Origin: Tetramitus jugosus
Lineage: Eukaryota; Protista; Heterolobosea
Length of the DNA stretch: 64,000 nucleotides
Reading direction: 5' to 3'
Assembly (NCBI GenBank): GCA_937625935.1
Contig: OW569388.1
Location: forward strand, 186,001 to 250,000
The notes under the pieces are model-generated. The model ran no database searches. It was given only the letters and a program-made list of their open reading frames with translations, and was not told the DNA's origin. This document shows, in pieces, positions 33,973 to 54,401 of the stretch; the stretch's first letter is position 1; every line of letters starts with the position of its first letter. A program made the translations under genes and the position numbers.

Positions 33973-36900
33973 TTATAGGATGTTACTGCTAGCAGTCACA
34001 AGAATTTCAATTTGCTGCTCTTTCAAAAGAACACCTGTGGAATCATTAACAGGCAGGACGATAAACTTGAGGGCACCCTCATTCAATCCTTTCACAGAAT
34101 TGATTCGGTAGTATGGGGAAAATGATCGCCCGATAAGTGAATCATCCTGGAAGATGTAATACGATAGAGTTGTTTTGGTACTTGCGTCATTGATGCTCCA
34201 GTGTAGGTTGATATGACAAATTAATTCATCGCCTGGCTCATTCATGGATTGAGGTAGCCATGTTAAGCTGAATCCTCCATCTCCAATTTTAAGTTGCTCT
34301 CTGTCTGGTACAAGATGAGCATAACCAACAGTTAATTGACCTAGCAAGAGCTTATATTCACAATTGATGTCAGACGATGAGTAGCAGCAGATACCAATAC
34401 TCCTTATCACTGATGAGACCATATCTCGAGGAATCATGACCGTTTCTCTTCTCCATCCATTCACATTGGATATTGTCGATTCTATTCTGTGAGTGATCCC
34501 ATCGGCTGATATCTCGGGCGCGCACGAGGGCAATAGATAGTGTGCTGTATTTTCCTCATCCAATAACACTAGAACAGCTCGGGAAGATGGCTGAAGTGCT
34601 TTTGTTATTGCCGTGATGAAGTATCCATTTCTCAAGTCCAAACAAGTTTTGAACAAAGAGTAAATGGAATCACTTCTTGGGTTGAAATTCTGTTTGGCGA
34701 ACATCAGTGAGGATCCTCCACAAAATGCTTCCTCATAGTAGAAAGTAACTGAGATAGATTGGTGTAGGGTTGCTTTGTCAGATGTCATGTACGACGGTAG
34801 AATACTCTGATCACTCAAGTTGTTCCATGGATTGCAAGACCTTTCTATTCCTTCTATAAAGTACTTACTGCCAACACCAGTGTTGAAATTAGAGGTAAAA
34901 GGTTCTCCATATGTTGCTACAATAGGTCTCTCCTCATAGAAATCCGCGAATCCCTCCTCTTTTGTTTGAATAGAAACAAATGGATCCGACAAGCGACTTC
35001 CAAAGTGGCCTGCCCAGTACTCAACATCCCTGCCTCCATCTCTAAAAATAATAAATCTCAACTTATCAAGTTCTTGACCTGTTACTTCAAACTGTCCTGA
35101 TAATAGATTCCATTGATTTGAACATTCGACCTTTCCTGATGAAAAACTACGAAGTATTGATTCGTCTTCTGATCTCAGCTCTAACTCCATGAACACTTCA
35201 TCAGCAAAATTGGGACCAGTTCCCTTATGCCAAACACCGAATCGAATGGCAACTGTTCCACACCTAGGAATGATATCCGCATAATCTAAAAGATCTATTC
35301 TCTGTTCCTTGGTACATGGTTGATATGAAGTAACGAAGCACTTGTCCCTAAACCCATTGCTCTCCACAGCCCATCCATCTCCTCCATTAATGATAACCTT
35401 CCAATGCTCTAAATTCGACTCTCCACTGGAGTTCTTCAGCAGTTGATATTGCCGAATTCCATTCCAAAATCGTGCCTCGTTATCCTCAAACATTAATCTT
35501 CGGGCTTTACTATCACCAGAAGCACCACATGCTTCAAATGTCCACCCTGGTGCAAATAAAGCGACAGATAATTCACACTTTTCAATCTCTTCCAATGCGA
35601 CATGTGTTGTATATCCTCCACCTCCATATGTATTTCTACCAAATATATCAATACCTACAAACACGTCCTCTTTTCTCTCTCCAGCAAGTTGAGCAGTTTT
35701 TAACAGCAACTCTGGGTTCCAACAATAGTTGAGAAAGATGGCATCACAGACATCGAAGAATTGTTTGTTCTTGAGAGTTAATGCATTCTGCCATTTCAAT
35801 TCTCCATCGATAGTGATTGAATCGTACCATATCACAAGTGAGCCAGGTATTCTTCGATGCATCTCTTGTGTCATGTAGTCCAAGAAACAGATTAACTTTT
35901 GAACACTAACCAAGTCAGGGAGGGTATTCTCAATGTTGAAGAACCACCCATCAAAACCATAGTACTCTGCCATATCGATCAATTTATCTGCGTACCTTTG
36001 CCCGTTCTTATCTTTTGACAGTAAGTAAAGAGTCTCCTTCCGTCCTTCATCCCATTCGGTAATGAAGGTAGCAAAGCACTTAACACCATTTTTGTGAGCG
36101 GTGTTGATCCACCCGACAGGTGGAATGGCTATCCTTTCGTGACTAAAGTAGATAAAATAGTCAATGTACTGCCAATGCTTGAAATTATAAACACATGGTT
36201 GATTATATCCCTGTGTCATGGCATCCTCTAGATAACCACCTTTCATATCGTGACAGTGGATTACCTTCCGCTTGTAATCTTTTAGTCTTTGTTGAAAGCG
36301 AACAGATGCCCTATTCATTGGATCAATACCGGGCTCCCATGCCTCGAGCTGTCTAACGCTAGACCAAGGTCTTGATCTAATATGCAACTCCTTCTGAAAT
36401 GCGGTATCACTTGGGTAGTGTGGTTTCTCATTCATCAACGACTCTACAAGTTGTTTTTCGCTTGTGAACTTTGTTTGTACGCTCCACTTGACACTCTCCA
36501 TACATCCAACAAAGCTGTTGCCAAACTTTTCATCTGTTCCAACGTATATTGGCCATTTGTTTGCTGAACAAGAAAAAGAGCATTGCTCCTTCCGTGCACA
36601 TACCTCTCCATCAATGAGAAGAGTGATCACTGAACTTGACTCCCTGGTTGTCGTATCCTGTGTATTATGGAAAGTAACTGCGACATGAGTCCATTTAAAC
36701 AAAGGTATTTGTACATTGGACACGAGTTCTAGTCTGCCATGACTCCACTGTGCATCAAACATCAAACGATTCGAATACTTGTCCAGATACAACTTGAAAT
36801 AGTCATCTTGGTTGCCCTTGAACAGAATCACTCTCTGTTTCTCCTTGTTTTGAACAGAACACCAATCACAGGTCACATAGATCCAACCAGAAACACAAGT

Positions 36901-37104
36901 GGTCATCACATCAGATGCTTCTCTATCCTCCATCTTCAGTACACTTTGAGAAAACAGACTCTTGTGAGACAGTCTGATACGATTGCCCACATACTGATCA
37001 ATAACAGGGTCATCGTTGTCAGTATGATCGCCTAAGAATTGACAAACAGACAACAGGGAAACACTTTGACTTGATTGATCAAGTTCTTCTTGTTGGAACA
37101 ACAT
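33973..37104 (-). CDS. ENGASE: GH85 endo-beta-N-acetylglucosaminidase with N-terminal LamG-like domain and inserted FBA (Fbs1-type) domain
   Basis: HCHDMKGGY, YFSH, AHKNGV, FITEW, GFDGWFFNIE (catalytic N-x-E), WYDSIT, GIDIFGR, ALFAPGW; WTHVAVT (LamG); GGDGW, FVTSY, WAGHFG (FBA). Confidence 0.92.
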   Translation of the reverse strand: MLFQQEELDQSSQSVSLLSVCQFLGDHTDNDDPVIDQYVGNRIRLSHKSLFSQSVLKMEDREASDVMTTCVSGWIYVTCDWCSVQNKEKQRVILFKGNQDDYFKLYLDKYSNRLMFDAQWSHGRLELVSNVQIPLFKWTHVAVTFHNTQDTTTRESSSVITLLIDGEVCARKEQCSFSCSANKWPIYVGTDEKFGNSFVGCMESVKWSVQTKFTSEKQLVESLMNEKPHYPSDTAFQKELHIRSRPWSSVRQLEAWEPGIDPMNRASVRFQQRLKDYKRKVIHCHDMKGGYLEDAMTQGYNQPCVYNFKHWQYIDYFIYFSHERIAIPPVGWINTAHKNGVKCFATFITEWDEGRKETLYLLSKDKNGQRYADKLIDMAEYYGFDGWFFNIENTLPDLVSVQKLICFLDYMTQEMHRRIPGSLVIWYDSITIDGELKWQNALTLKNKQFFDVCDAIFLNYCWNPELLLKTAQLAGERKEDVFVGIDIFGRNTYGGGGYTTHVALEEIEKCELSVALFAPGWTFEACGASGDSKARRLMFEDNEARFWNGIRQYQLLKNSSGESNLEHWKVIINGGDGWAVESNGFRDKCFVTSYQPCTKEQRIDLLDYADIIPRCGTVAIRFGVWHKGTGPNFADEVFMELELRSEDESILRSFSSGKVECSNQWNLLSGQFEVTGQELDKLRFIIFRDGGRDVEYWAGHFGSRLSDPFVSIQTKEEGFADFYEERPIVATYGEPFTSNFNTGVGSKYFIEGIERSCNPWNNLSDQSILPSYMTSDKATLHQSISVTFYYEEAFCGGSSLMFAKQNFNPRSDSIYSLFKTCLDLRNGYFITAITKALQPSSRAVLVLLDEENTAHYLLPSCAPEISADGITHRIESTISNVNGWRRETVMIPRDMVSSVIRSIGICCYSSSDINCEYKLLLGQLTVGYAHLVPDREQLKIGDGGFSLTWLPQSMNEPGDELICHINLHWSINDASTKTTLSYYIFQDDSLIGRSFSPYYRINSVKGLNEGALKFIVLPVNDSTGVLLKEQQIEILVTASSNIL

Positions 37105-44191: not shown

Positions 44192-47100
44192 ATGACAACA
44201 ACAAAAACTTTGGATCATCATCATGACAATGATAATGATAACAACAACAACAACAACAACCATAATAACAACACATGGCATCGATTTGAGCCAAACTTGA
44301 TCGAAAGACCCACATTTGCCGATCATTTCCATCATTTTGTTCTTCAGGAGCCTCAGAAATCACTTCTTCATTTCTTGAATGACTCTGGTCACTTGTTGCA
44401 CAGCTTGACAGCTTCCATGTTGGATGCTGCTGCCATTCGTGTCGCTCAATTCTTGTTATCATCGGAGAAAAAAAATTTGGCGGGAGATCGCATCATTTTA
44501 CTGTGTGATCCTGGTGTGGATTTTGTGGTTTCGTTTTTTGGTGTCTTGTATGCAGGGATGATTGCTGTGCCTAGTTATCCACCCATGAATGAAAAACAGT
44601 TTAGAAAGTTGTTCATGATTGGTAAGAATTGTAGAGCTAAGACGGTTCTCATGTCAGGAGAGTTCTATCGGATGATGCACAGTGCTCTGCCAGAGCTAGA
44701 GAGAGAATTGGGCATGGATGAGCCGATTCAGTGGTTGAGCATGGATCACGTTTCTGATTTGTCTCGTATTTTGAGCTGTGCTTCGACGAAAAAGACGGTG
44801 GCAGTCGATGAGGCAGCCACATTGCAAAAACGCAGTGATGATTTACAATGGATCGAGTCCATTGTGAGAAATGAGTTTGTTCGACCAGAGATACAGAGTG
44901 GAGATGTGGCGTTTTTGCAGTACACGAGTGGTTCTACGTCGGATCCAAAGGGAGTCATGGTCACTCATCAGAACATTTTGTTGCATACGTCAATGATTTG
45001 TCGTGTGTTTGAATACTCTGGAAAGGATACTAGTGTTACTGTAAGTGTGTCTTTTTGTGTGCGTGACCTCTAGTTTATTTACTTGTTTTGTGGGCATCCA
45101 TTTTTGACTGTAATATTTTGATGTGTATTTGTGTTTGTGTGTCCATTGTCCATTCTAGTGGCTTCCTCCCTATCATGACATGGGATTGATTGGATCTCTG
45201 TTGACTGCAGCTGCTTGCTTAACCACAACCTATGTACTTTCTCCGTTGGCATTTGTCAATAATCCAATTGTGTGGTTACAGACGGTTACGAAATACAAGG
45301 CAACAATTACGGGTGGACCTAATTTTGGTTACGAGTATTGTGCATTGCGTGTTTCTGAAGCTCAATTGGCTCAGTTGGATTTATCTACATTGAGACTGTG
45401 TTATACTGGTGCAGAACGTGTGTAGTATTTTGTCGCATTTAGATTGTTAAGTTTGTCTATGATGAAAGAGTTTGATAGTCTAATATTTGTTCATTTTATC
45501 TGTGTTTGATGACGTAGCGATTCGACTGTCGACCATGCAACACTTTTCACAAAAGTTTGCTTCGGTTGGATTTCGATTCGACACTTTCTATCCATGCTAT
45601 GGTCTCGCAGAAGCAACACTCATGGTGTCTGGAAAATTGACAAGCAAGGAGTTGATTAAACATATTCGAGTGGAGCAGAGAGCGCTTCAAGCCAATAAGA
45701 TTAAGCTATTGAGCGAGTCCAGTGGAGATAACCAACAAATATTGGTATCTTCTGGAAATTCGAGTCATATTCAACCTGTGAAAATTGTGAACGCAGAGAC
45801 GAGAACGTATTGTAAAAATACTTATGAAATTGGCGAAATTTGGGTGCAGCGAAACGGACAGACACCTATTGGATATTGGGCAAACGAACAGCTCACAGAA
45901 GAGTCGTTTTATGCACGAACGAGCGATGAGAACGATCAGACAGAATATATGAGAACAGGCGATTTAGGATTCGTTGATGAGCAAGGAGCTCTATTTGTAT
46001 GTGGTAGAATCAAGGATTTGATTATTATTCGAGGTAGAAACATTTATCCGCAGGATGTTGAGGCAGTTGTCGAGAATTCTTCTCCTCTCGTGAGAAATGG
46101 ATGCTCTGCTGCGTTTAGCGTTGAGCACAGTGCATGTGAGCGCTTGGTTGTAGTTTGTGAGGTGAAGGACGTGAGTAAGCAAGACACCGAAAAGATACAA
46201 ACACTGTCGGAGTCAATGGTGAAGTCAATATCGGATGAGTTGCAAGTTCGAGTGAGCACCATTATATTTATTAAGCCAAAGACAATTCCTAAGACGACCA
46301 GCGGTAAAATTAGACGATTTGAGTGCAAGCAGTTGTTTAATGATCAAAAGTTGGAGGTAATTGCTACGATGGAGTTCGAAAACGAAGTCGAGAAAATTCA
46401 GATAACATCCAATGATGCAGTTGAATCGCATGAACCTGCTTCCTTTTTGCATTCTGAAAGTCACTTGCTCGTCGTTCAGCAATTGGTGTCTCGGTTAGCA
46501 CAAACGCTGAACATTAGTGAAGATTTGATCGATATTAATCGCCCATTCTCCGAAATGGGATTAGATTCACTGAAAACCTCCCTGTTGATTGGTGAGCTGG
46601 GCAAGGTTCTCGATAGAGAGTTATCTCCGATAATATTTTATCAATTCCCAACAATTAATTCGTTAGCCGATCATCTATGTGCAAATCAGCAAAACACAGA
46701 TTCAAGTAACATTAATCATCAAAAGTATGGCCCAATGGAGGATATTGCCATTGTTGGTATGTCATGCAGATTGCCAGGAGCAGACAACCTGGAGCAATTC
46801 TGGACTAATTTACTGTCTGGAACCAATGCTCCTTCATCCTTGCATCCAAAGTATAGAAGAAGTTCATTCCCTGTCTCCTACATTGATAATGCCTTCCAAT
46901 TTGATCCAGAATTCTTCTCTATATCTCGACGAGAGACCAAGTCTATGGATCCTCAACAACGGATACTGTTAGAGGTTTGTTGGGAAGCATTGGAGGATGC
47001 AGGAGTTTCCGCAGAGGTATTGAACAATTCAGACACTGGGGTTTTCGTTGGTGCTTCTTCATCCGACTTTGCTCTCGAAAGTTACAAGTATTCAGGACTC

Positions 47101-50100
47101 AATTCTGCTCATTCAGCAACTGGAGCTGCTTTATCTATTTTGGCTAATCGATTGTCATATAGTTTCAATTTAAGAGGTCCTTCCATGGTTTTGGACTCTG
47201 CTTGCAGCTCCTCTTTGCTAGCCGTCCACCAAGCTTGTCAAAGCATTCGAGCTGGAGATTGTTCTATGGCTCTTGCTGCTGGTGTCAATCTCGTTCTGGC
47301 TGACACTATCTCTCAGTCACTGGTTACTGCAAACTTCTTGTCTTCAGATGGACAATGCAAAGCATTTGACGCTGAAGCGGATGGTTATGTTAGAGGGGAA
47401 GGCTGTGGTGTTGTCGTTCTGAAGCCACTATCGAGAGCATTGAGTGACAATGACCAAGTATACGCGCTTATCAAGGGTTCTGCAGTTGTTCAGGACGGAA
47501 GAAGTAACGGACTCACTGCTCCAAATGAGAAAGCCCAGGAGTTGGTTATATCAGAGGCATGCAAGAGAGCTAACGTCGATCCAGCCCAAATTACCTTTGT
47601 GGAGTGTCATGGAACAGGAACCTACTTGGGCGATCCAATTGAAGCACAAGCATTGGGCAGTATCGTAGGAAAATCTACTCGAGAGGTTCCATGTATTATT
47701 GGATCTGTGAAATCGAATATTGGGCATTTGGAAGCTGCTTCTGGTATTGCATCTTTGATTAAGACAGCTCTCGCAGTTCAATCTAGGCGTTTACCAGCAA
47801 CCGTCAACCTCAAAACTCCAAATCCGTTGATTCCTTTTGATAAATACTGCCTTGAGTTGGCTAGAATAGAGCATGAGTTGCCGGAGCAAGTGATTGCTGG
47901 AGTCAGTAATTTTGGTTTCGGTGGCACAAATGTTCACGCTATTTTGGCTTCTGCACCAAAGAATATTGGTACAAAGAATGCTGTGGTGGATAACTCATTG
48001 ATCAAGCAATATGTTTTTCCATTTTCTGCAAAGAATGAACATTCATTGAAGCATTTGGTTGGCAAGTATATCAACTTTTTGCAGAATGCAGTTGATGCTG
48101 GAGACTCATTCCTAAGCAACTTGAGTTATTCTCTTTGCATTAGAAGAACTCATCTTCCTCAGAGGATTTGTATTTGCGCTTCAAACACATCTGACTTGAC
48201 TCAGGAGCTAAAGAAGTACCGCAATGGAAAGGATTCAGTTCATATGAAGAAGGGCTTTGTTGCCTCCAACTCGGTTTCATCTGTCGTTTTCGTTTTCCCA
48301 GGACAGGGAGTTGATCAAGTGAGTCATGCTAAATTCTTATTATCAAATCCGGTATTCCATTCAAGCATCAAGACGATTGAAAGGGCATTCCAAGAGCTGG
48401 TTCCAAATATCAGCTTTGAGCACATTATTAATAACTATGAAGCACTGAAAGAGGATCTCTTGTCTGTGCAGAGTAGTGTGTTTGCAGTTCAAGTTGCATT
48501 AAGTAGCTTGTGGACATATCTTGGTGTTACGCCATCGGCTCTCATTGGTCATTCACTCGGTGAAATTACAGCAGCATATCTTGGTGGGGCATTAACACTT
48601 CAGAACGCAGTCCGTATTATTTACTCTCGCAGTATTGTAATGCAGAAGAAACTGAAAGGCAGAGGCAAAATGATCATTGCCCGATTATCTAAGGAGGCGG
48701 CTACTGAAATTGTTCAGAATATTGAAGGAGTGTCAATTGCAGCTGTGAACTCTACACGATCCATTACATTTGCTGTTGATATTGAACAAGTGGCAGTAAT
48801 GAATGCTCTCCTTTCGGATAATTCCGTTTCTCACAAATACTTGGACATGGACTATGCATTCCATTGTCCACGAGTTGATGAGGTCACACCTGAATTCTTG
48901 CAACTTGTGAGGGATGTGAATGCTCAGTCTTTGCAAATTCCAATATATTCTACCACAAAGGGAGTCAAGCTCTCAAGAGAAGATGGTAAGACACTTACAG
49001 GAGAGTATTGGGTAAAGAACATGGTCAATCCTGTTCTATTTGAAACAGCCACTCAACTAGTGCTTCAGGAGAAGCGAAACATCGGCATGAGACATTTGTT
49101 TATCGAGGTGGCTGGAAGAGAGGTGTTGAGTCCTGTGGTTCAACAAATTATTCACTCTTGTGCTGATAGCACACATAAGTCAGTTGCTACTGTACACAAG
49201 AGCACAACTGAACTACATGCAACTCTATTCGCTTCTCTCTATGCAAGTGGAGTTAACTTTAACTGGGAGCGAGCACTCGGAGCAACTCTAGGCAGTGAAT
49301 ACGTCAGACTTCCAAATTATAGCTGGCTTCACTCTACTCCGTTTGTTCCTGCCTTCATCAATAAGAATAAGATCGAGCTTGAGAGTGAGCCTTTGAATGT
49401 TAATGATATTGTTGAGGGAATTAAAACTGAAGAAGTGGATGACTTTGAGAGTATGAAGGAGTTTGGATTATTGCTTGATAATATCTGCATAGCATATATC
49501 CTGTGTGCGTTGGTCAATATGGGATGGTCGGACATATTTAAGCAAGGCAATGTTGTAACGTTGGATCAGGTGATGAAGGAGTTGGCCATTCACTCAAGTC
49601 ACGCCTCCCTATTCACTCACATTATGCACACTCTGGAAAAGAATAACTTTTTGAATCCAAGTAATGTGAATACATGGCAAATTATGAAGACTTTAACGTC
49701 TCAGAAACATCTGACAGAATCAATCGAGCACATGCTACAACAAGGACGAGTGAACTTCCCAACATTCTTGGCTGAATTTAACATGATTGAGCGAAGTGGA
49801 AAGGAGCTACACAATGTTTTGCAGGGTAAGGTGAATGGTTTACAGATTCTATTCCCTAATGGATCCATGGACAACACTGAGGCTCTTTATGAGCGATCTG
49901 CTTTGTCTGAGGCCTACAACAATCAAGTGTGTCTATTCTTTGAGAGAGCAATGGCCACCATATCCACAACAGCTGGCAATTCAAGATACAAGCAAAAGAT
50001 TCTAGAAATTGGAGCTGGAACTGGTGGATTGACTTCTCATGTGCTAGAGACATTGTCAGCCGAGAATTTGAGTCCAAACAACAAGGATTTACGTACGGCT

Positions 50101-52263
50101 ACTATCCATGAATATGTATTCACTGATGTGTCAAAGCTGTTCCTATCGTATGCTCGACAAAAGTTTTCTGCTTGCTCTTACATGAAATACCAGTTATTGG
50201 ATGTCGAAAAGAGTCCTTCAGTGCAAGGTTTCAAGAAGCATTATTATGACTTTGTTCTTGCTGCCAATGTTCTGCATGCAACAATGAACCTACATGAAAC
50301 ACTGAAGAACATTAAGGAGTTATTGAAACCAGGTGGTGTTCTTGTCATCCTGGAGGTCACGAAGCCAACACTCTTCTTGGATCTGACATTCGGTTTATTG
50401 GACGGATGGTGGCGATTCTCTCAACACGGTAAGCAGGATATGAGAGATTCGTATCCGCTTCTCAGCTGGAGCGAGTGGAGTCTGTTGCTCACTGAAGCAG
50501 GATTTGCAAATGTGAATAGAATCAGCAGTCAGATCAGCTCGGCACATGCCATCGAAGAAGAATTCCAATCTGTAATGATCGCTCAACTACTTGAAATTCA
50601 AGACGAAGATAATGATGATCAAGAGGATGAATTGTCTGCCAGTGAGGTTAACCAAGCGCATGTTGTTGGTGATCAATTCAAGATTGATGATTCCGCATTT
50701 GAAAACATTAAGCGTTTAATTGAAGAGATCAAGCATGATAGATCAAGTGCTATTGCACTCAATACTCAGCTTCTTCAGTTTGTTCGTAATGTAGTCTCTC
50801 AAACTCTAATGATACCAGAGTCTGATCTAGACATAGATCAGAGTCTTGATAGCTTGGGTCTGGACTCTTTGATGGGTCTAGAGATCAGAAACTTGTTACA
50901 AAACAAGCTCGATGTTAAGATTCCAATTTCTGCCTTGATTGGAGAGGAGGGAGATGGATCTGGAATCACTATTGCCAGTTTGACACAGACAATGACCAGA
51001 GCCATTATGGTGTCCGAGGAACCGATCGAATCAGAACAACCAGATGACAACGTTGTGGAGCAATCGCAAGAAGAGGTCTCCAACGGCTTCTCTGATGCTG
51101 TGGAAGAGATAGTACACAACACGGCGAGTATGGATTCGAATGGCACAAAGGCCTGCATTCTTGCGATGGGAGTTGCCACTCCAAAATACAAGTACACGCA
51201 GAAGGAGATGGCTGAAATGGCTGTTGACTACTATGGTATCGAAAGTGATGAGGATAAGAAGCAACGATTGTACAAAATATTTGATGGATCTGAGATTGAT
51301 ACTCGCTACTCTGTCTGTGATTTTAGTACCATTAACAGACGAGAGGTATTTACATCATTCCAAGCAAGAAACCAAATTTATGAGACTGAAGCTGTCGAGC
51401 TGGCTGTTCAATCAGCAACAAAGGCATTAGAAGATTGGGGTGGCGACAGAAGCAACATTACTCACATTGTAAGTGTGAGCACAACAGGTAACAAAATTCC
51501 AGGTATCGAGTTTGAATTGGTGCATCGTCTCGGTCTATCCAAACATGTGGAACGCATTGCCGTAAACTTCATGGGTTGCTTCGGAGCTTTGCCTGGTTTG
51601 AAGACTGCCGTTTCATTTGCACAAATGAACTGCAAGAATCGTGTCTTGTTCGTGTCAACTGAGATTTGCAGCACGCACATTGAACCAGAGCCTACAACTG
51701 AGAACTTTGTCAGTTGTGCTATTTTCGCTGACGGATCTGCTGCAGCAATCATTGGCTGTGGTGATCCAGAGTTTGACAGTTTTGAAAGACCGCACTTTGA
51801 AGTTTTGAAGACAACCAGTTTTGCTATTCAGAACAGTTTGGACAAGATGTATTGGAAGGTGACTGATGCTGGATGGAGACTTGGTCTCTCAAAGGACATT
51901 CCTGATTTGATCTTCAATAACATTGAAACATTTTCAAAGGAGATGCTCGGCGCAAGACATGGAAGTGTTGCCAATATTCCAAAGCTGGATGCCGACTGGG
52001 CAGTACATCCAGGAGGAAAAGCAATTTTGATTGCTGTCGAAAAAGCCCTGGGGCTAACAAAAGAGCAAACAAAGCACAGTTGGAGCATTATGAAAGACAG
52101 AGGAAACATGTCCAGCAGCACAATTCTGCACGTCTTGCAAAAGATGATCAAGGAAGAACGTGAGAACTCTCATATGAAACAGAAGGCATTGACATGCTGT
52201 ATGGTGTTCGGACCGGGACTTACGATGGAAGGTTGTATTCTTAGAAGATTGAATAATAATTAA
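44192..52263 (+). CDS. Hybrid FAAL-ACP-KS-AT-cMT-ACP-type III PKS megasynthase (~2617 aa); exons 44192-45040, 45159-45417, 45518-52263
   Basis: Splicing restores the FAAL motifs T|WLPPYHDMGLIG and GAE(P)IR. Also FLQYTSGSTSDPKG, YGLAEATL, RTGDLG, PKTTSGK; ACP GLDSL x2; KS DSACSS/HGTGT/NIGHLE; AT GHSLG/YAFH; MT LEIGAGTGG/NVLHAT; type III GCF/HPGG/GNMSS/FGPG. Confidence 0.95.
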
Positions 52264-52322: not shown

Positions 52323-54401
52323 TCAATCAACATCCAAATCCAACGGTTCACCATCTGCCAACAAATCATGAAGCAATTGTTCATCGAATGAATCCCACAG
52401 TACAACATTGGAGTCACCTGCTTCCGTCCTAACAGTTTTACGCTGATCGTTCGGAGAGGCATCAGAATCGAGGTTGTCCTTGAATAGAATCTCGGGCGTT
52501 TGTTGTCCATCTCTAATCAACTGTACTTGCTCAATTGCTCTCTCTTCTTGTGGTACTACTGCAGAGTAAATGATTGAACTCATGTGTTTCTCCTTCTCCT
52601 GAATGGCATTCTCTTTTTGTTGTCTGGCAAGTGCAAGTTCAATCTTCTCCTCATCAGTCAGACCAACACTCGTCGGTCGCTTGCTTCCATCAATCGTATG
52701 GGCTTGAATACAACTCAAAAGATCACGTATGACATCACTGTGCTCCTTCTCAATCATGGAGAACTTTGTGGCAGCAGTGGCCAAGTGATAGTAGCCCAAT
52801 CGAATATTCATCAAGAGTCTTGTTACCACTTCTGGTGTTGCGTCCTGTATGTCTCGATCAACACTGAGTCCGTTGTTGAATTGACTCACGTACATCAAAT
52901 GGATACGAGAAGCAAACGCAACGTATTGAATGGGAGCGGGACAATACGTGAACAACATGATGTGCTTTGAGACGTCTTCTGTGATGATATCAGCAAACTT
53001 GCTCAATTTTTCGATCGAGATATCAGGTGTGGCAAACATGAGCTGTAAACGAATGCCGTTACTGATCAATCGATAGTAGAAATGGAAGAGAACTTCACTC
53101 ATGTGTGTCTGTTGATTGTTTGGCCTCCAGTAGCCATGAAGAAGACACTCCGCATAGTCAACATAACTACTCACAGCAATAATATCACCCAGATCATCTG
53201 GAAGAGACATGAATGCCTTTAAGCTCTCAATTGGGTGTTCTTCTTGGTTGGGATGCACTCGAGGTTCAATACCACGAATGAGGACTTGAAGTGCACGAAC
53301 ACCATCTCTATAATCTGAAAACTTTCCCTTGAGACATAGGGCGACCAGAGCCAAACATTTGTGCACTACTGCGAGCTTCATTTTCTGACTCGCGTCCAAA
53401 TCTTCCTTTTTCACCAAGTGAAGATAATATTCAATTGCTTCTTTGTAAACTATTATTCTCCGCTCTTCTCCTCCTTCTCCAATCAAGTAGTAAGAAGCAA
53501 GGGCCAAGGCACAAATGAGGTAAACTTTGTCTTCGTTTGAGAATTTCAAGCTTCGAACCGTTTGTTTGTTCAAATAATCTCTAAACAATCGTTTGCACTG
53601 TTCAAATGTTCTTCTTGCAACAACAGAATGACCCAACCTCTGCAACGTAAAAGCTTGAATGCACAAGTATAGAAGAATCTTGGTTCCTGAACAAGTCTTC
53701 TTCTTGGATCGTTTGCTTCTCTTGGGAGAACCGTTACTGACGTCTTGGTCGTTTGAAGCATCGTTAAAAAAGTTTTTGGACGAGTAGTGCTTGTGGTTGA
53801 AGTGACCCAACTTTTCAACGTCTTCTCGACTCCACAATCGTTGTTCCCTCAATTGCTGTTTCTGTCGAATCAGATTGGTTTGTTGTTGTTGCAAAAGGTC
53901 GGAACTTGTAATGTGAAGGTTCTCTTGTAAAGTGTTGTCAATTGACAATTCTGTTGAGTATTCTTGAATTGCCGCAATAGTGTCATTCAATTGAGAAACG
54001 AGTTGAATGAGTTGACGGATAGTTTCCCTATCTAACATTGGAAATCCGTGAGAGAAAATATCAATGTAACTGTCCAACATTTGACTCATGTTTGTTACAT
54101 AATTTAGCTTGTTGTATATTTGTTGGACTCGATTGTTGAAGCGAACAGCAGGTAGAGACATTGATGAGAAGGACAATGAAGTGTCTACTTCGTCCGCAGA
54201 AGTCATGGTGGCTGACTCCTGGTGTCGCGCAATTTTGATTTTATTGTTGGGAGAGCCATCATCCATTGTTGGATGATCTGACAAGGCTCTCGCTCGCTTC
54301 AAAGATCGTGAGGGACTACTTGTTCCACGAGAAAATTGCATGGTATTGATCTTTCGTTTTGTTTGATATAATGGATTCTCTTCGTGGTAATAACTTTCCA
54401 T
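52323..54401 (-). CDS. Hypothetical helical protein, possibly transcription-factor-like
   Basis: Basic NLS-like patches, Gln-rich segment, helical core, acidic C-terminus; no DNA-binding motif recognised. Confidence 0.6.
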   Translation of the reverse strand: MESYYHEENPLYQTKRKINTMQFSRGTSSPSRSLKRARALSDHPTMDDGSPNNKIKIARHQESATMTSADEVDTSLSFSSMSLPAVRFNNRVQQIYNKLNYVTNMSQMLDSYIDIFSHGFPMLDRETIRQLIQLVSQLNDTIAAIQEYSTELSIDNTLQENLHITSSDLLQQQQTNLIRQKQQLREQRLWSREDVEKLGHFNHKHYSSKNFFNDASNDQDVSNGSPKRSKRSKKKTCSGTKILLYLCIQAFTLQRLGHSVVARRTFEQCKRLFRDYLNKQTVRSLKFSNEDKVYLICALALASYYLIGEGGEERRIIVYKEAIEYYLHLVKKEDLDASQKMKLAVVHKCLALVALCLKGKFSDYRDGVRALQVLIRGIEPRVHPNQEEHPIESLKAFMSLPDDLGDIIAVSSYVDYAECLLHGYWRPNNQQTHMSEVLFHFYYRLISNGIRLQLMFATPDISIEKLSKFADIITEDVSKHIMLFTYCPAPIQYVAFASRIHLMYVSQFNNGLSVDRDIQDATPEVVTRLLMNIRLGYYHLATAATKFSMIEKEHSDVIRDLLSCIQAHTIDGSKRPTSVGLTDEEKIELALARQQKENAIQEKEKHMSSIIYSAVVPQEERAIEQVQLIRDGQQTPEILFKDNLDSDASPNDQRKTVRTEAGDSNVVLWDSFDEQLLHDLLADGEPLDLDVD

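What the first reader, a model, noticed from the sequence alone, without database searches (positions are those of the whole stretch)
45518..52263. Predicted product: 4-methyl-5-alkylresorcinol (MPBD-type signal lipid) or methylated alkylpyrone
Inference from domain order. The FAAL loads a fatty acid on ACP1, KS-AT adds one extender, and the cMT methylates the alpha carbon. With no KR the beta-keto group is kept, giving R-CO-CH(CH3)-CO-ACP2. Two malonyl extensions by the type III domain, then C2-C7 aldol cyclisation and decarboxylation, give 4-methyl-5-alkylbenzene-1,3-diol. This is the scaffold of the Dictyostelium differentiation signal MPBD, reached by a different route. A single extension would give a 5-methyl-6-alkyl-4-hydroxy-2-pyrone. 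Possible roles are encystment or aggregation signalling, cyst-wall phenolic lipid (as in Azotobacter), or antibacterial defence.
Basis: inference. Interest (0 to 1): 0.85.

Follow-up and report, generated by a model that had tools for sequence, protein, structure and literature searches.

The report
Amoeba one-protein methyl-alkylresorcinol synthase
A soil amoeba splices and expresses one giant enzyme that looks built to turn a fatty acid into a methylated phenolic lipid; such type I-type III fusion enzymes had been reported only from slime moulds, and this design, shared by several unrelated protists, appears undescribed.

Summary
The gene is real and intact: three exons (44192-52263; both introns seen spliced in four soil metatranscriptomes), 2,617 aa, single copy, very likely Tetramitus jugosus. 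Order FAAL-ACP-KS-AT-cMT-ACP-type III PKS, no KR/DH/ER; all catalytic residues are present. The same architecture occurs in Percolomonas, Acrasis, unnamed protists and a Gefionella transcript. The predicted chemistry holds up, and I favour the resorcinol over the pyrone: the type III domain's best solved match is StlA (MPBD synthase), it keeps the resorcinol-linked Trp, its bacterial relatives sit in PKS-methylase-flavin operons, and two AT-less relatives are flanked by a UbiG-type O-methylase and a phenol hydroxylase. Best reading (0.55): a 4-methyl-5-alkylresorcinol, probably long-chain and so not MPBD itself, perhaps O-methylated afterwards by an unlinked enzyme. Pyrone, different methylation or KS iteration remain open; no product was measured and the biological role is untested. 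It works like cyanobacterial CylA-B-D/H-I fused into one chain and is not a StlA orthologue in its type I half. The scan noted this same stretch before, not on other DNA.

The parts
44192..45040 (+). Exon 1 (283 codons): N-terminal part of the FAAL with the AMP-binding loop
   Evidence: best solved matches are FAALs 7R7E-G, 3KXW, FadD32
45041..45158 (+). Intron 1, 118 nt, GT..AG, phase 0
   Evidence: skipped in four RNA runs
45159..45417 (+). Exon 2 (86 codons plus 1 base): middle of the FAAL
   Evidence: matches unspliced homologues in alignment A1
45418..45517 (+). Intron 2, 100 nt, GT..AG, phase 1
   Evidence: skipped in four RNA runs
45518..46374 (+). Start of exon 3: C-terminal part of the FAAL, with the FAAL-type insertion and the catalytic-lysine motif
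   Evidence: E 7e-58 to cyanobacterial FAAL 7R7F, against 1e-8 or worse for acyl-CoA ligases
46477..46677 (+). ACP1 (starter carrier), Ser350 of the exon-3 frame
   Evidence: PF00550; serine invariant
46735..47964 (+). KS, with Cys562, His697, His736
48286..49221 (+). AT, Ser1012 in GHSLG, YAFH motif (malonyl-like; H/Y/T/V-AFH or PYH in the family)
   Evidence: motif rules from PMC7327777
49450..50559 (+). C-methyltransferase with lid, SAM motif, His1586/Glu1612 dyad
   Evidence: E 3e-64 to CurJ C-MT 5THY with both dyad residues aligned; core is the most conserved domain against the nearest relatives, 84% and 79%
50767..50964 (+). ACP2, Ser1783
51142..52263 (+). Type III PKS, Cys2020-His2163-Asn2196, Trp2112 at the CHS-256 position; stop codon
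   Evidence: best solved match 2H84 Steely1/StlA, E 2e-71, next 2e-50; model pLDDT 94.5, rmsd 1.5 A and 36% identity to 2H84

Best explanation
One 2,617-aa polypeptide makes a 4-methyl-5-alkylresorcinol (or its resorcylic acid). Shown: domain order, intact active sites, splicing, expression, conservation. Inferred from family knowledge: the FAAL adenylates a free fatty acid, probably medium to long chain, and loads ACP1; the KS condenses it once with malonyl put on ACP2 by the AT; the cMT methylates the alpha carbon with SAM; with no KR the 2-methyl-3-oxoacyl group is handed from ACP2 to the type III cysteine, extended twice with malonyl-CoA, closed by C2-C7 aldol and decarboxylated. The type I half exists to supply the methyl branch that bacteria such as Streptomyces griseus get from methylmalonyl-CoA. 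The core may be O-methylated later by an unlinked UbiG-like enzyme (G000:C37). The role most likely is a membrane or cyst phenolic lipid or a defence compound rather than a diffusible MPBD-like signal; this last step is a guess.
For: Architecture and residues. Spliced RNA in four soil studies, with 30 synonymous against 10 non-synonymous listed differences. Type III: best solved match StlA, same residues as StlA orthologues at CHS positions 194, 197, 215, 216, 254, 256, 263, 265, 267, 338; Trp2112 falls on Pks11 residue 230 by the offsets, the ArsB Trp281 site needed for resorcinols (PMC6274091, PMC5916927, PMC7064976). Nearest bacterial type III genes lie in PKS-methylase-flavin operons, the layout shown to give alkylresorcinols in planctomycetes (PMC10896814). 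Two AT-less relatives are flanked by a UbiG-type O-methylase above the TIGR01983 cut-off and an MhpA-like phenol hydroxylase, enzymes that fit a phenol. CylA-B, type I modules and CylI run the same logic as separate proteins (PMC6836626). Two PPTases exist in the genome.
Against: No product measured. The Trp is near universal in this clade (123 of 124 other rows) and Trp enzymes such as CepA and Pks11 give much pyrone in vitro. StlB was not retrieved, so I could not test which residues separate aldol from Claisen closure. Sequence cannot tell mono- from gem-dimethylation or single from iterative KS use. No tailoring genes flank the Tetramitus gene, and its best match to the relatives' hydroxylase is only 23-26% identical. 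Starter length was not predicted.
Confidence: 0.55

Rival explanations
1. Same assembly line, different methyl pattern or cycle number: the KS acts twice (2,4-dimethyl-5-alkylresorcinol), the unreduced ketoacyl group is gem-dimethylated (non-aromatic dione), or the type III domain takes the chain before methylation (plain 5-alkylresorcinol).
For: KR-less modules leave the beta-keto substrate open to a second methylation; the second-best solved match of the MT is the gem-dimethylating DisA MT; fungal non-reducing PKSs with this minimal set iterate (own knowledge); RpsA and MMAR_2474 make dimethyl resorcinols.
Against: MT is much closer to monomethylating CurJ (E 3e-64 against 6e-41); KS-AT best matches modular synthases and the whole N-terminal 1,690 residues are collinear with a bacterial one-module FAAL-KS-AT-MT-KR-ACP; gem-dimethylation would block aromatisation, which the phenol-tailoring neighbours of relatives argue against.
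Confidence: 0.2
2. The main product in the cell is a methylated alkyl-alpha-pyrone (one or two type III extensions, then lactonisation).
For: Pks11 makes methylated alkylpyrones from C16-C18 starters despite the Trp; CepA gave mostly pyrones in vitro; the isolated StlA type III domain gives pyrones (own recollection of Ghosh et al. 2008; paper not held).
Against: Trp at the ArsB site is invariant in the family; resorcinol synthases shift to pyrones mainly in vitro; StlA, the closest solved relative, gives a resorcinol in vivo (PMC4164351); O-methylase plus phenol hydroxylase beside relatives.
Confidence: 0.15
3. The resorcinol is only an intermediate: it is hydroxylated and O-methylated to an alkyl-methoxy-methyl-(hydro)quinone, a straight-chain look-alike of demethoxy-ubiquinone that acts as a membrane redox carrier or protectant. 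This extends the best explanation and is not exclusive of it.
For: Gene trio in L011, L012/L013; Tetramitus has a second UbiG-like gene at C37 whose nearest relatives are those clustered methylases, apart from its Coq3-like gene at C9; one bacterial relative's operon lies directly before a bo3-type quinol oxidase; SrsABC, FtpA and mycobacterial Pks10 pathways end in alkylquinones.
Against: The Tetramitus methylase is unlinked and only 35% identical; no clear orthologue of the hydroxylase; heterolobosean loci L008-L010, L014, L033 have no such neighbours.
Confidence: 0.25
4. The type III domain works apart from the type I half (for example after cleavage), using acyl-CoA and giving unmethylated phenolic lipids.
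For: StlB releases its type III domain in stalk cells (PMC9489281); the ACP2-type III linker is long, acidic and poorly conserved; CHS position 308 is Ala, not the Lys/Arg linked to ACP use (the Lys is one place earlier, as in StlA).
Against: The fusion is kept across Tetramitus, Percolomonas, Acrasis and others with every upstream active site intact; StlA has the same Lys-small pattern and takes its own ACP.
Confidence: 0.07

Closest known systems
Dictyostelium steely enzymes StlA (MPBD) and StlB (DIF-1 precursor)
   Same: Type I PKS fused through an ACP to a C-terminal type III PKS; a cMT upstream (StlA); type III domain 36% identical with near-identical cavity residues; same predicted ring scaffold as MPBD.
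   Different: No DH, ER or KR, so no de novo acyl synthesis; starter comes from a fused FAAL-ACP; KS does not group with StlA KS; host is a heterolobosean.
Cylindrocyclophane line CylA (FAAL), CylB (ACP), CylD/CylH (type I), CylI (type III)
   Same: Fatty acid activation, ACP loading, type I extension, then two type III extensions and cyclisation to a monoalkylresorcinol.
   Different: There separate proteins, two reducing modules, beta-methyl by an HMG-CoA-synthase cassette, halogenation and dimerisation; here one chain, one non-reducing module and a SAM alpha-methyl.
SrsABC (Streptomyces griseus), FtpA-E (Myxococcus xanthus), Pks10 (Mycobacterium smegmatis)
   Same: Methylated alkylresorcinol core from a fatty acyl starter; Trp at the ArsB site; methylase plus flavin hydroxylase tailoring, seen beside the AT-less relatives.
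   Different: They use a stand-alone type III enzyme with methylmalonyl-CoA; here a type I KS-AT-cMT module provides the methyl; no linked tailoring genes in Tetramitus.
Bacterial FAAL-ACP-KS-AT-cMT-KR-ACP starter modules (e.g. P0052, Pirellulales)
   Same: Collinear over 1,690 residues of exon 3 at 34% identity.
   Different: They keep a KR and pass the chain to another type I or NRPS module; here KR is absent and a type III domain ends the chain.
hidABC-type operons (cyanobacteria, planctomycetes, chlamydiae)
   Same: Nearest bacterial type III relatives at 40-44% identity lie in type III-methylase-flavin oxidoreductase operons.
   Different: Stand-alone enzymes; they form a branch apart from the fused eukaryotic domains.

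Membership tests
Steely (type I FAS/PKS-type III hybrid) | Type I PKS fused via ACP to a C-terminal type III PKS in one chain | tested here: met
Steely (type I FAS/PKS-type III hybrid) | Full reducing FAS-like half (DH, ER, KR) that builds the acyl starter | tested here: not met
   no DH/ER/KR hit and no room for them; present in P0009
Steely (type I FAS/PKS-type III hybrid) | Orthology to StlA | tested here: inconclusive
   KS apart from StlA; MT joins StlA on a long branch; type III in one unresolved set of fused eukaryotic domains (quick trees only)
Steely (type I FAS/PKS-type III hybrid) | Direct ACP-to-type III transfer | not testable with these tools
   needs biochemistry
FAAL | Closer to solved FAALs than to acyl-CoA ligases or NRPS A domains, with the FAAL-specific insertion and an adjacent ACP | tested here: met
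   (exon by exon); insertion aligned with 7R7F
FAAL | Blocked CoA pocket / FAAL-specific helix; no acyl-CoA formed | not tested
   features described in PMC8460268; the joined domain was not modelled
PKS C-methyltransferase (CurJ type) | Lid plus SAM-binding core, His-Glu dyad | tested here: met
   invariant in A1
PKS C-methyltransferase (CurJ type) | Mono- rather than gem-dimethylation | tested here: inconclusive
   closer to CurJ than DisA; no diagnostic motif found (primary papers not held)
Alkylresorcinol-forming type III PKS (ArsB/SrsA/FtpA/StlA-like) | Cys-His-Asn triad | tested here: met
Alkylresorcinol-forming type III PKS (ArsB/SrsA/FtpA/StlA-like) | Trp at the ArsB-281 / Pks11-230 site | tested here: met
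   mapped through Pks11 offsets and CHS, not by direct alignment to ArsB
Alkylresorcinol-forming type III PKS (ArsB/SrsA/FtpA/StlA-like) | Long-chain tunnel residues (Pks18 Thr144/Cys205/Ala209; BpsA T/C/F) | tested here: met
   Thr-Cys-Ile (rule from PMC7064976)
Alkylresorcinol-forming type III PKS (ArsB/SrsA/FtpA/StlA-like) | Resorcinol product shown | not testable with these tools
   needs assay
srsABC-type alkylquinone cluster | Methylase and flavin hydroxylase linked to the synthase | tested here: not met
   absent around the Tetramitus gene; met in relatives L011-L013

The most novel reading that the evidence does not exclude
Microbial eukaryotes of several distant groups (Heterolobosea, a malawimonad, Physarum, unidentified protists) share an overlooked family of type III-terminated megasynthases, of which the slime-mould steelys are one branch; the FAAL-cMT form makes a methyl-alkylresorcinol that is finished into an alkyl analogue of demethoxy-ubiquinol, the first polyketide quinone redox carrier or cyst lipid in protists.
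Probability: 0.2. Interest if true: 0.85.

Novelty: new variant of a known kind. Interest (0 to 1): 0.62.

Why it matters
A 2022 paper says steely hybrids have not been reported outside slime moulds (PMC9489281). This gene, its relatives in Percolomonas, Acrasis and Gefionella, and a reducing steely-like gene in Naegleria lovaniensis show that type I-type III fusions are wider spread. The design is a self-contained route from a free fatty acid to a methylated phenolic lipid with no need for methylmalonyl-CoA, which is a compact model for type I to type III hand-over and a possible production tool. It also gives the first concrete small-molecule candidate for heterolobosean chemical ecology or encystment, including the aggregative amoeba Acrasis.

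Tried and rejected
Contamination or pseudogene: rejected (chromosomal position beside RPN1 and a tubulin gene, spliced introns, intact frame, strain differences mostly synonymous). Hidden KR or DH: rejected. Acyl-CoA ligase or NRPS A domain instead of FAAL: rejected. O- or N-methyltransferase: rejected. Methylmalonyl-specific AT: unlikely (Phe in the motif, GHSLG; relatives vary at the Tyr). Claisen closure to an acylphloroglucinol: unlikely because the methylated carbon would become quaternary (chemical reasoning). Linked gene cluster in Tetramitus: none found. Full-length search on the FAAL-KS part was swamped by multi-KS bacterial proteins. Metagenome scan with the methylase alignment returned general UbiG genes, none with a type III PKS nearby. 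Primary papers on StlA, CurJ MT and DisA MT were not held. Careful trees did not finish; only quick trees are quoted. Paper searches found no description of this architecture, within a library that lacks most subscription journals.
Full report
Source and gene model. The window is G000:C45; the genome has 26.35 Mb in 56 pieces, which fits Tetramitus jugosus paTetJugo1.1 (26.3 Mb, 55 scaffolds plus mitochondrion; PMC11106597). The identification is by these numbers, not by a record name. Contigs from four soil metatranscriptomes of separate studies skip exactly the two GT..AG introns; of 40 listed strain differences 30 are synonymous. The gene is single copy. The genome also holds an NRPS-PKS, a reducing PKS/FAS with TE, a type II KS and two PPTases. 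Neighbours are housekeeping or unknown genes.

Anatomy (residue numbers are in the exon-3 frame; add 370 for the whole protein). FAAL: both outer exons match solved FAALs far better than CoA ligases, and the insertion aligns with that of 7R7F. ACP1 Ser350 and ACP2 Ser1783, KS Cys562/His697/His736 and AT Ser1012 are present and kept in the family. The AT motif is YAFH; relatives have T/V-AFH or PYH, which I read as malonyl. The MT is a CurJ-type C-methyltransferase with the His-Glu dyad aligned, and its core is the best conserved domain against the two nearest relatives (84% and 79%, against 70-72% for KS), so it is not a relic. No KR, DH or ER is found, and the MT-ACP2 spacing leaves no room for one. 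The type III domain has its triad and folds with high confidence.

Family. Full-length relatives with the same order occur in unnamed protist contigs (38-63% identity), Percolomonas cosmopolitus, Acrasis kona and a Gefionella okellyi transcript. Two further eukaryotic contigs carry a form without AT. The heterolobosean KS domains form one well supported group apart from StlA, while Gefionella and the AT-less pair group elsewhere, so those may be a parallel assembly, and the Gefionella record is a transcriptome entry that I could not check for contamination. The N-terminal 1,690 residues of exon 3 are collinear with a bacterial FAAL-ACP-KS-AT-cMT-KR-ACP protein: the simplest history is such a module losing its KR and gaining a type III end (inference). 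Type III trees put the fused eukaryotic domains, StlA orthologues included, apart from the stand-alone bacterial ones, with deep branching unresolved (quick trees).

Product. Four lines favour resorcinol over pyrone. First, the best solved sequence match is StlA's type III domain (E 2e-71, next 2e-50), with the same residues at ten cavity positions; StlA makes MPBD in vivo. By structure alone 2H84 ties with plant enzymes in Z, though it has the lowest rmsd and highest identity. Second, Trp2112 sits at the site that decides resorcinol formation in ArsB/ArsC; by offsets it falls on Pks11 residue 230. Third, the closest bacterial type III genes I opened lie in type III-methylase-flavin operons, a layout shown to give alkylresorcinols. 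Fourth, both AT-less relatives are flanked by orthologous UbiG-type O-methylases and MhpA-like phenol hydroxylases, the srsABC logic. Limits: the Trp is near universal in this clade and Trp enzymes can still give pyrones; StlB was not available for contrast; mono- versus di-methylation and single versus repeated KS use cannot be read from sequence. The column labelled A308 is really CHS 307: the protein has Lys there and Ala at 308, much as StlA has Lys-Ser. The Thr-Cys-Ile tunnel and the FAAL point to a longer chain than MPBD's pentyl (inference).

Tailoring and role. Tetramitus has two UbiG-type genes: a Coq3-like one (C9) and a second at C37 with an N-terminal hydrophobic stretch, whose nearest relatives in my set are the clustered methylases. 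No clear hydroxylase orthologue was found. An O-methylated or quinone end product is therefore possible but weakly supported. Nothing here tests signalling, cyst wall or defence; the gene is expressed in soil populations, and no Naegleria copy of this form turned up in the searches although Naegleria encysts (a blank limited by the length window of the search).

Comparison and verdict. It works like CylA-CylB-type I-CylI fused into one chain and reaches the SrsA/StlA scaffold with a SAM methyl. It meets the fusion criterion of a steely but fails the reducing-FAS criterion, so I do not file it as a steely. I found no paper describing it, and PMC9489281 states that steelys are unreported outside slime moulds. 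Verdict: real, undescribed variant of type I-type III hybrids; 4-methyl-5-alkylresorcinol core at about 0.55; interest 0.62. The scan's earlier notes on this same stretch agree and were not used as support.

Noticed in passing
L034:4623-12776 (Naegleria lovaniensis C9374_002556 and the model upstream): Two adjacent gene models read together as KS-AT-DH-ER-KR-ACP-type III, a reducing steely-like hybrid outside slime moulds; P0218 from a metagenome has the same order.
   Followed up: partly
P0199 (Physarum polycephalum transcript), P0229 (L031, L032), P0227: Shorter AMP-ligase-ACP-type III fusions with no type I module; their type III domains fall among the fused eukaryotic set.
   Followed up: partly
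L011:4925-13886, L012:6386-16366, L013: Three-gene cluster in two unidentified eukaryotes (GC 53% and 63%): UbiG-type O-methylase, AT-less FAAL-ACP-KS-cMT-ACP-type III synthase, MhpA-like flavin hydroxylase. An AT-less synthase needs a trans-acting AT, not seen in the cluster.
   Followed up: partly
L025:1462-2529 (G000:C37): Second UbiG-like methylase of Tetramitus with an N-terminal hydrophobic stretch, closest to the clustered methylases; candidate unlinked tailoring enzyme.
   Followed up: partly
L051:5001-11098: Bacterial type III-methylase-flavin operon directly upstream of a bo3-type quinol oxidase operon, suggestive of a respiratory polyketide quinone.
   Followed up: no
L020:382-8541 with L019:4922-5401 (G000:C28): Intron-split KS-AT-DH-ER-KR-ACP-TE reducing PKS or type I FAS; could supply free fatty acids to the FAAL.
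   Followed up: no
L017:970-7935 (G000:C36): C-A-PCP-KS-AT-ACP-TE hybrid, already noted by the scan.
   Followed up: no
P0127 (Cymbomonas tetramitiformis): A 4,818-aa model made of twelve tandem type III PKS repeats in two alternating types; may be an assembly or annotation artefact.
   Followed up: no
P0007 and P0131/P0142, between FAAL and ACP1: A hydrophobic insertion after the FAAL that could be a membrane anchor; absent in the heterolobosean proteins.
   Followed up: no
window 33973-37104 (-): GH85 endoglycosidase with an F-box-associated domain inserted and an N-terminal LamG-like domain.
   Followed up: no
window 52323-54401 (-): 692-aa frame converging on the synthase's 3' end, no Pfam or NCBIfam match.
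   Followed up: partly
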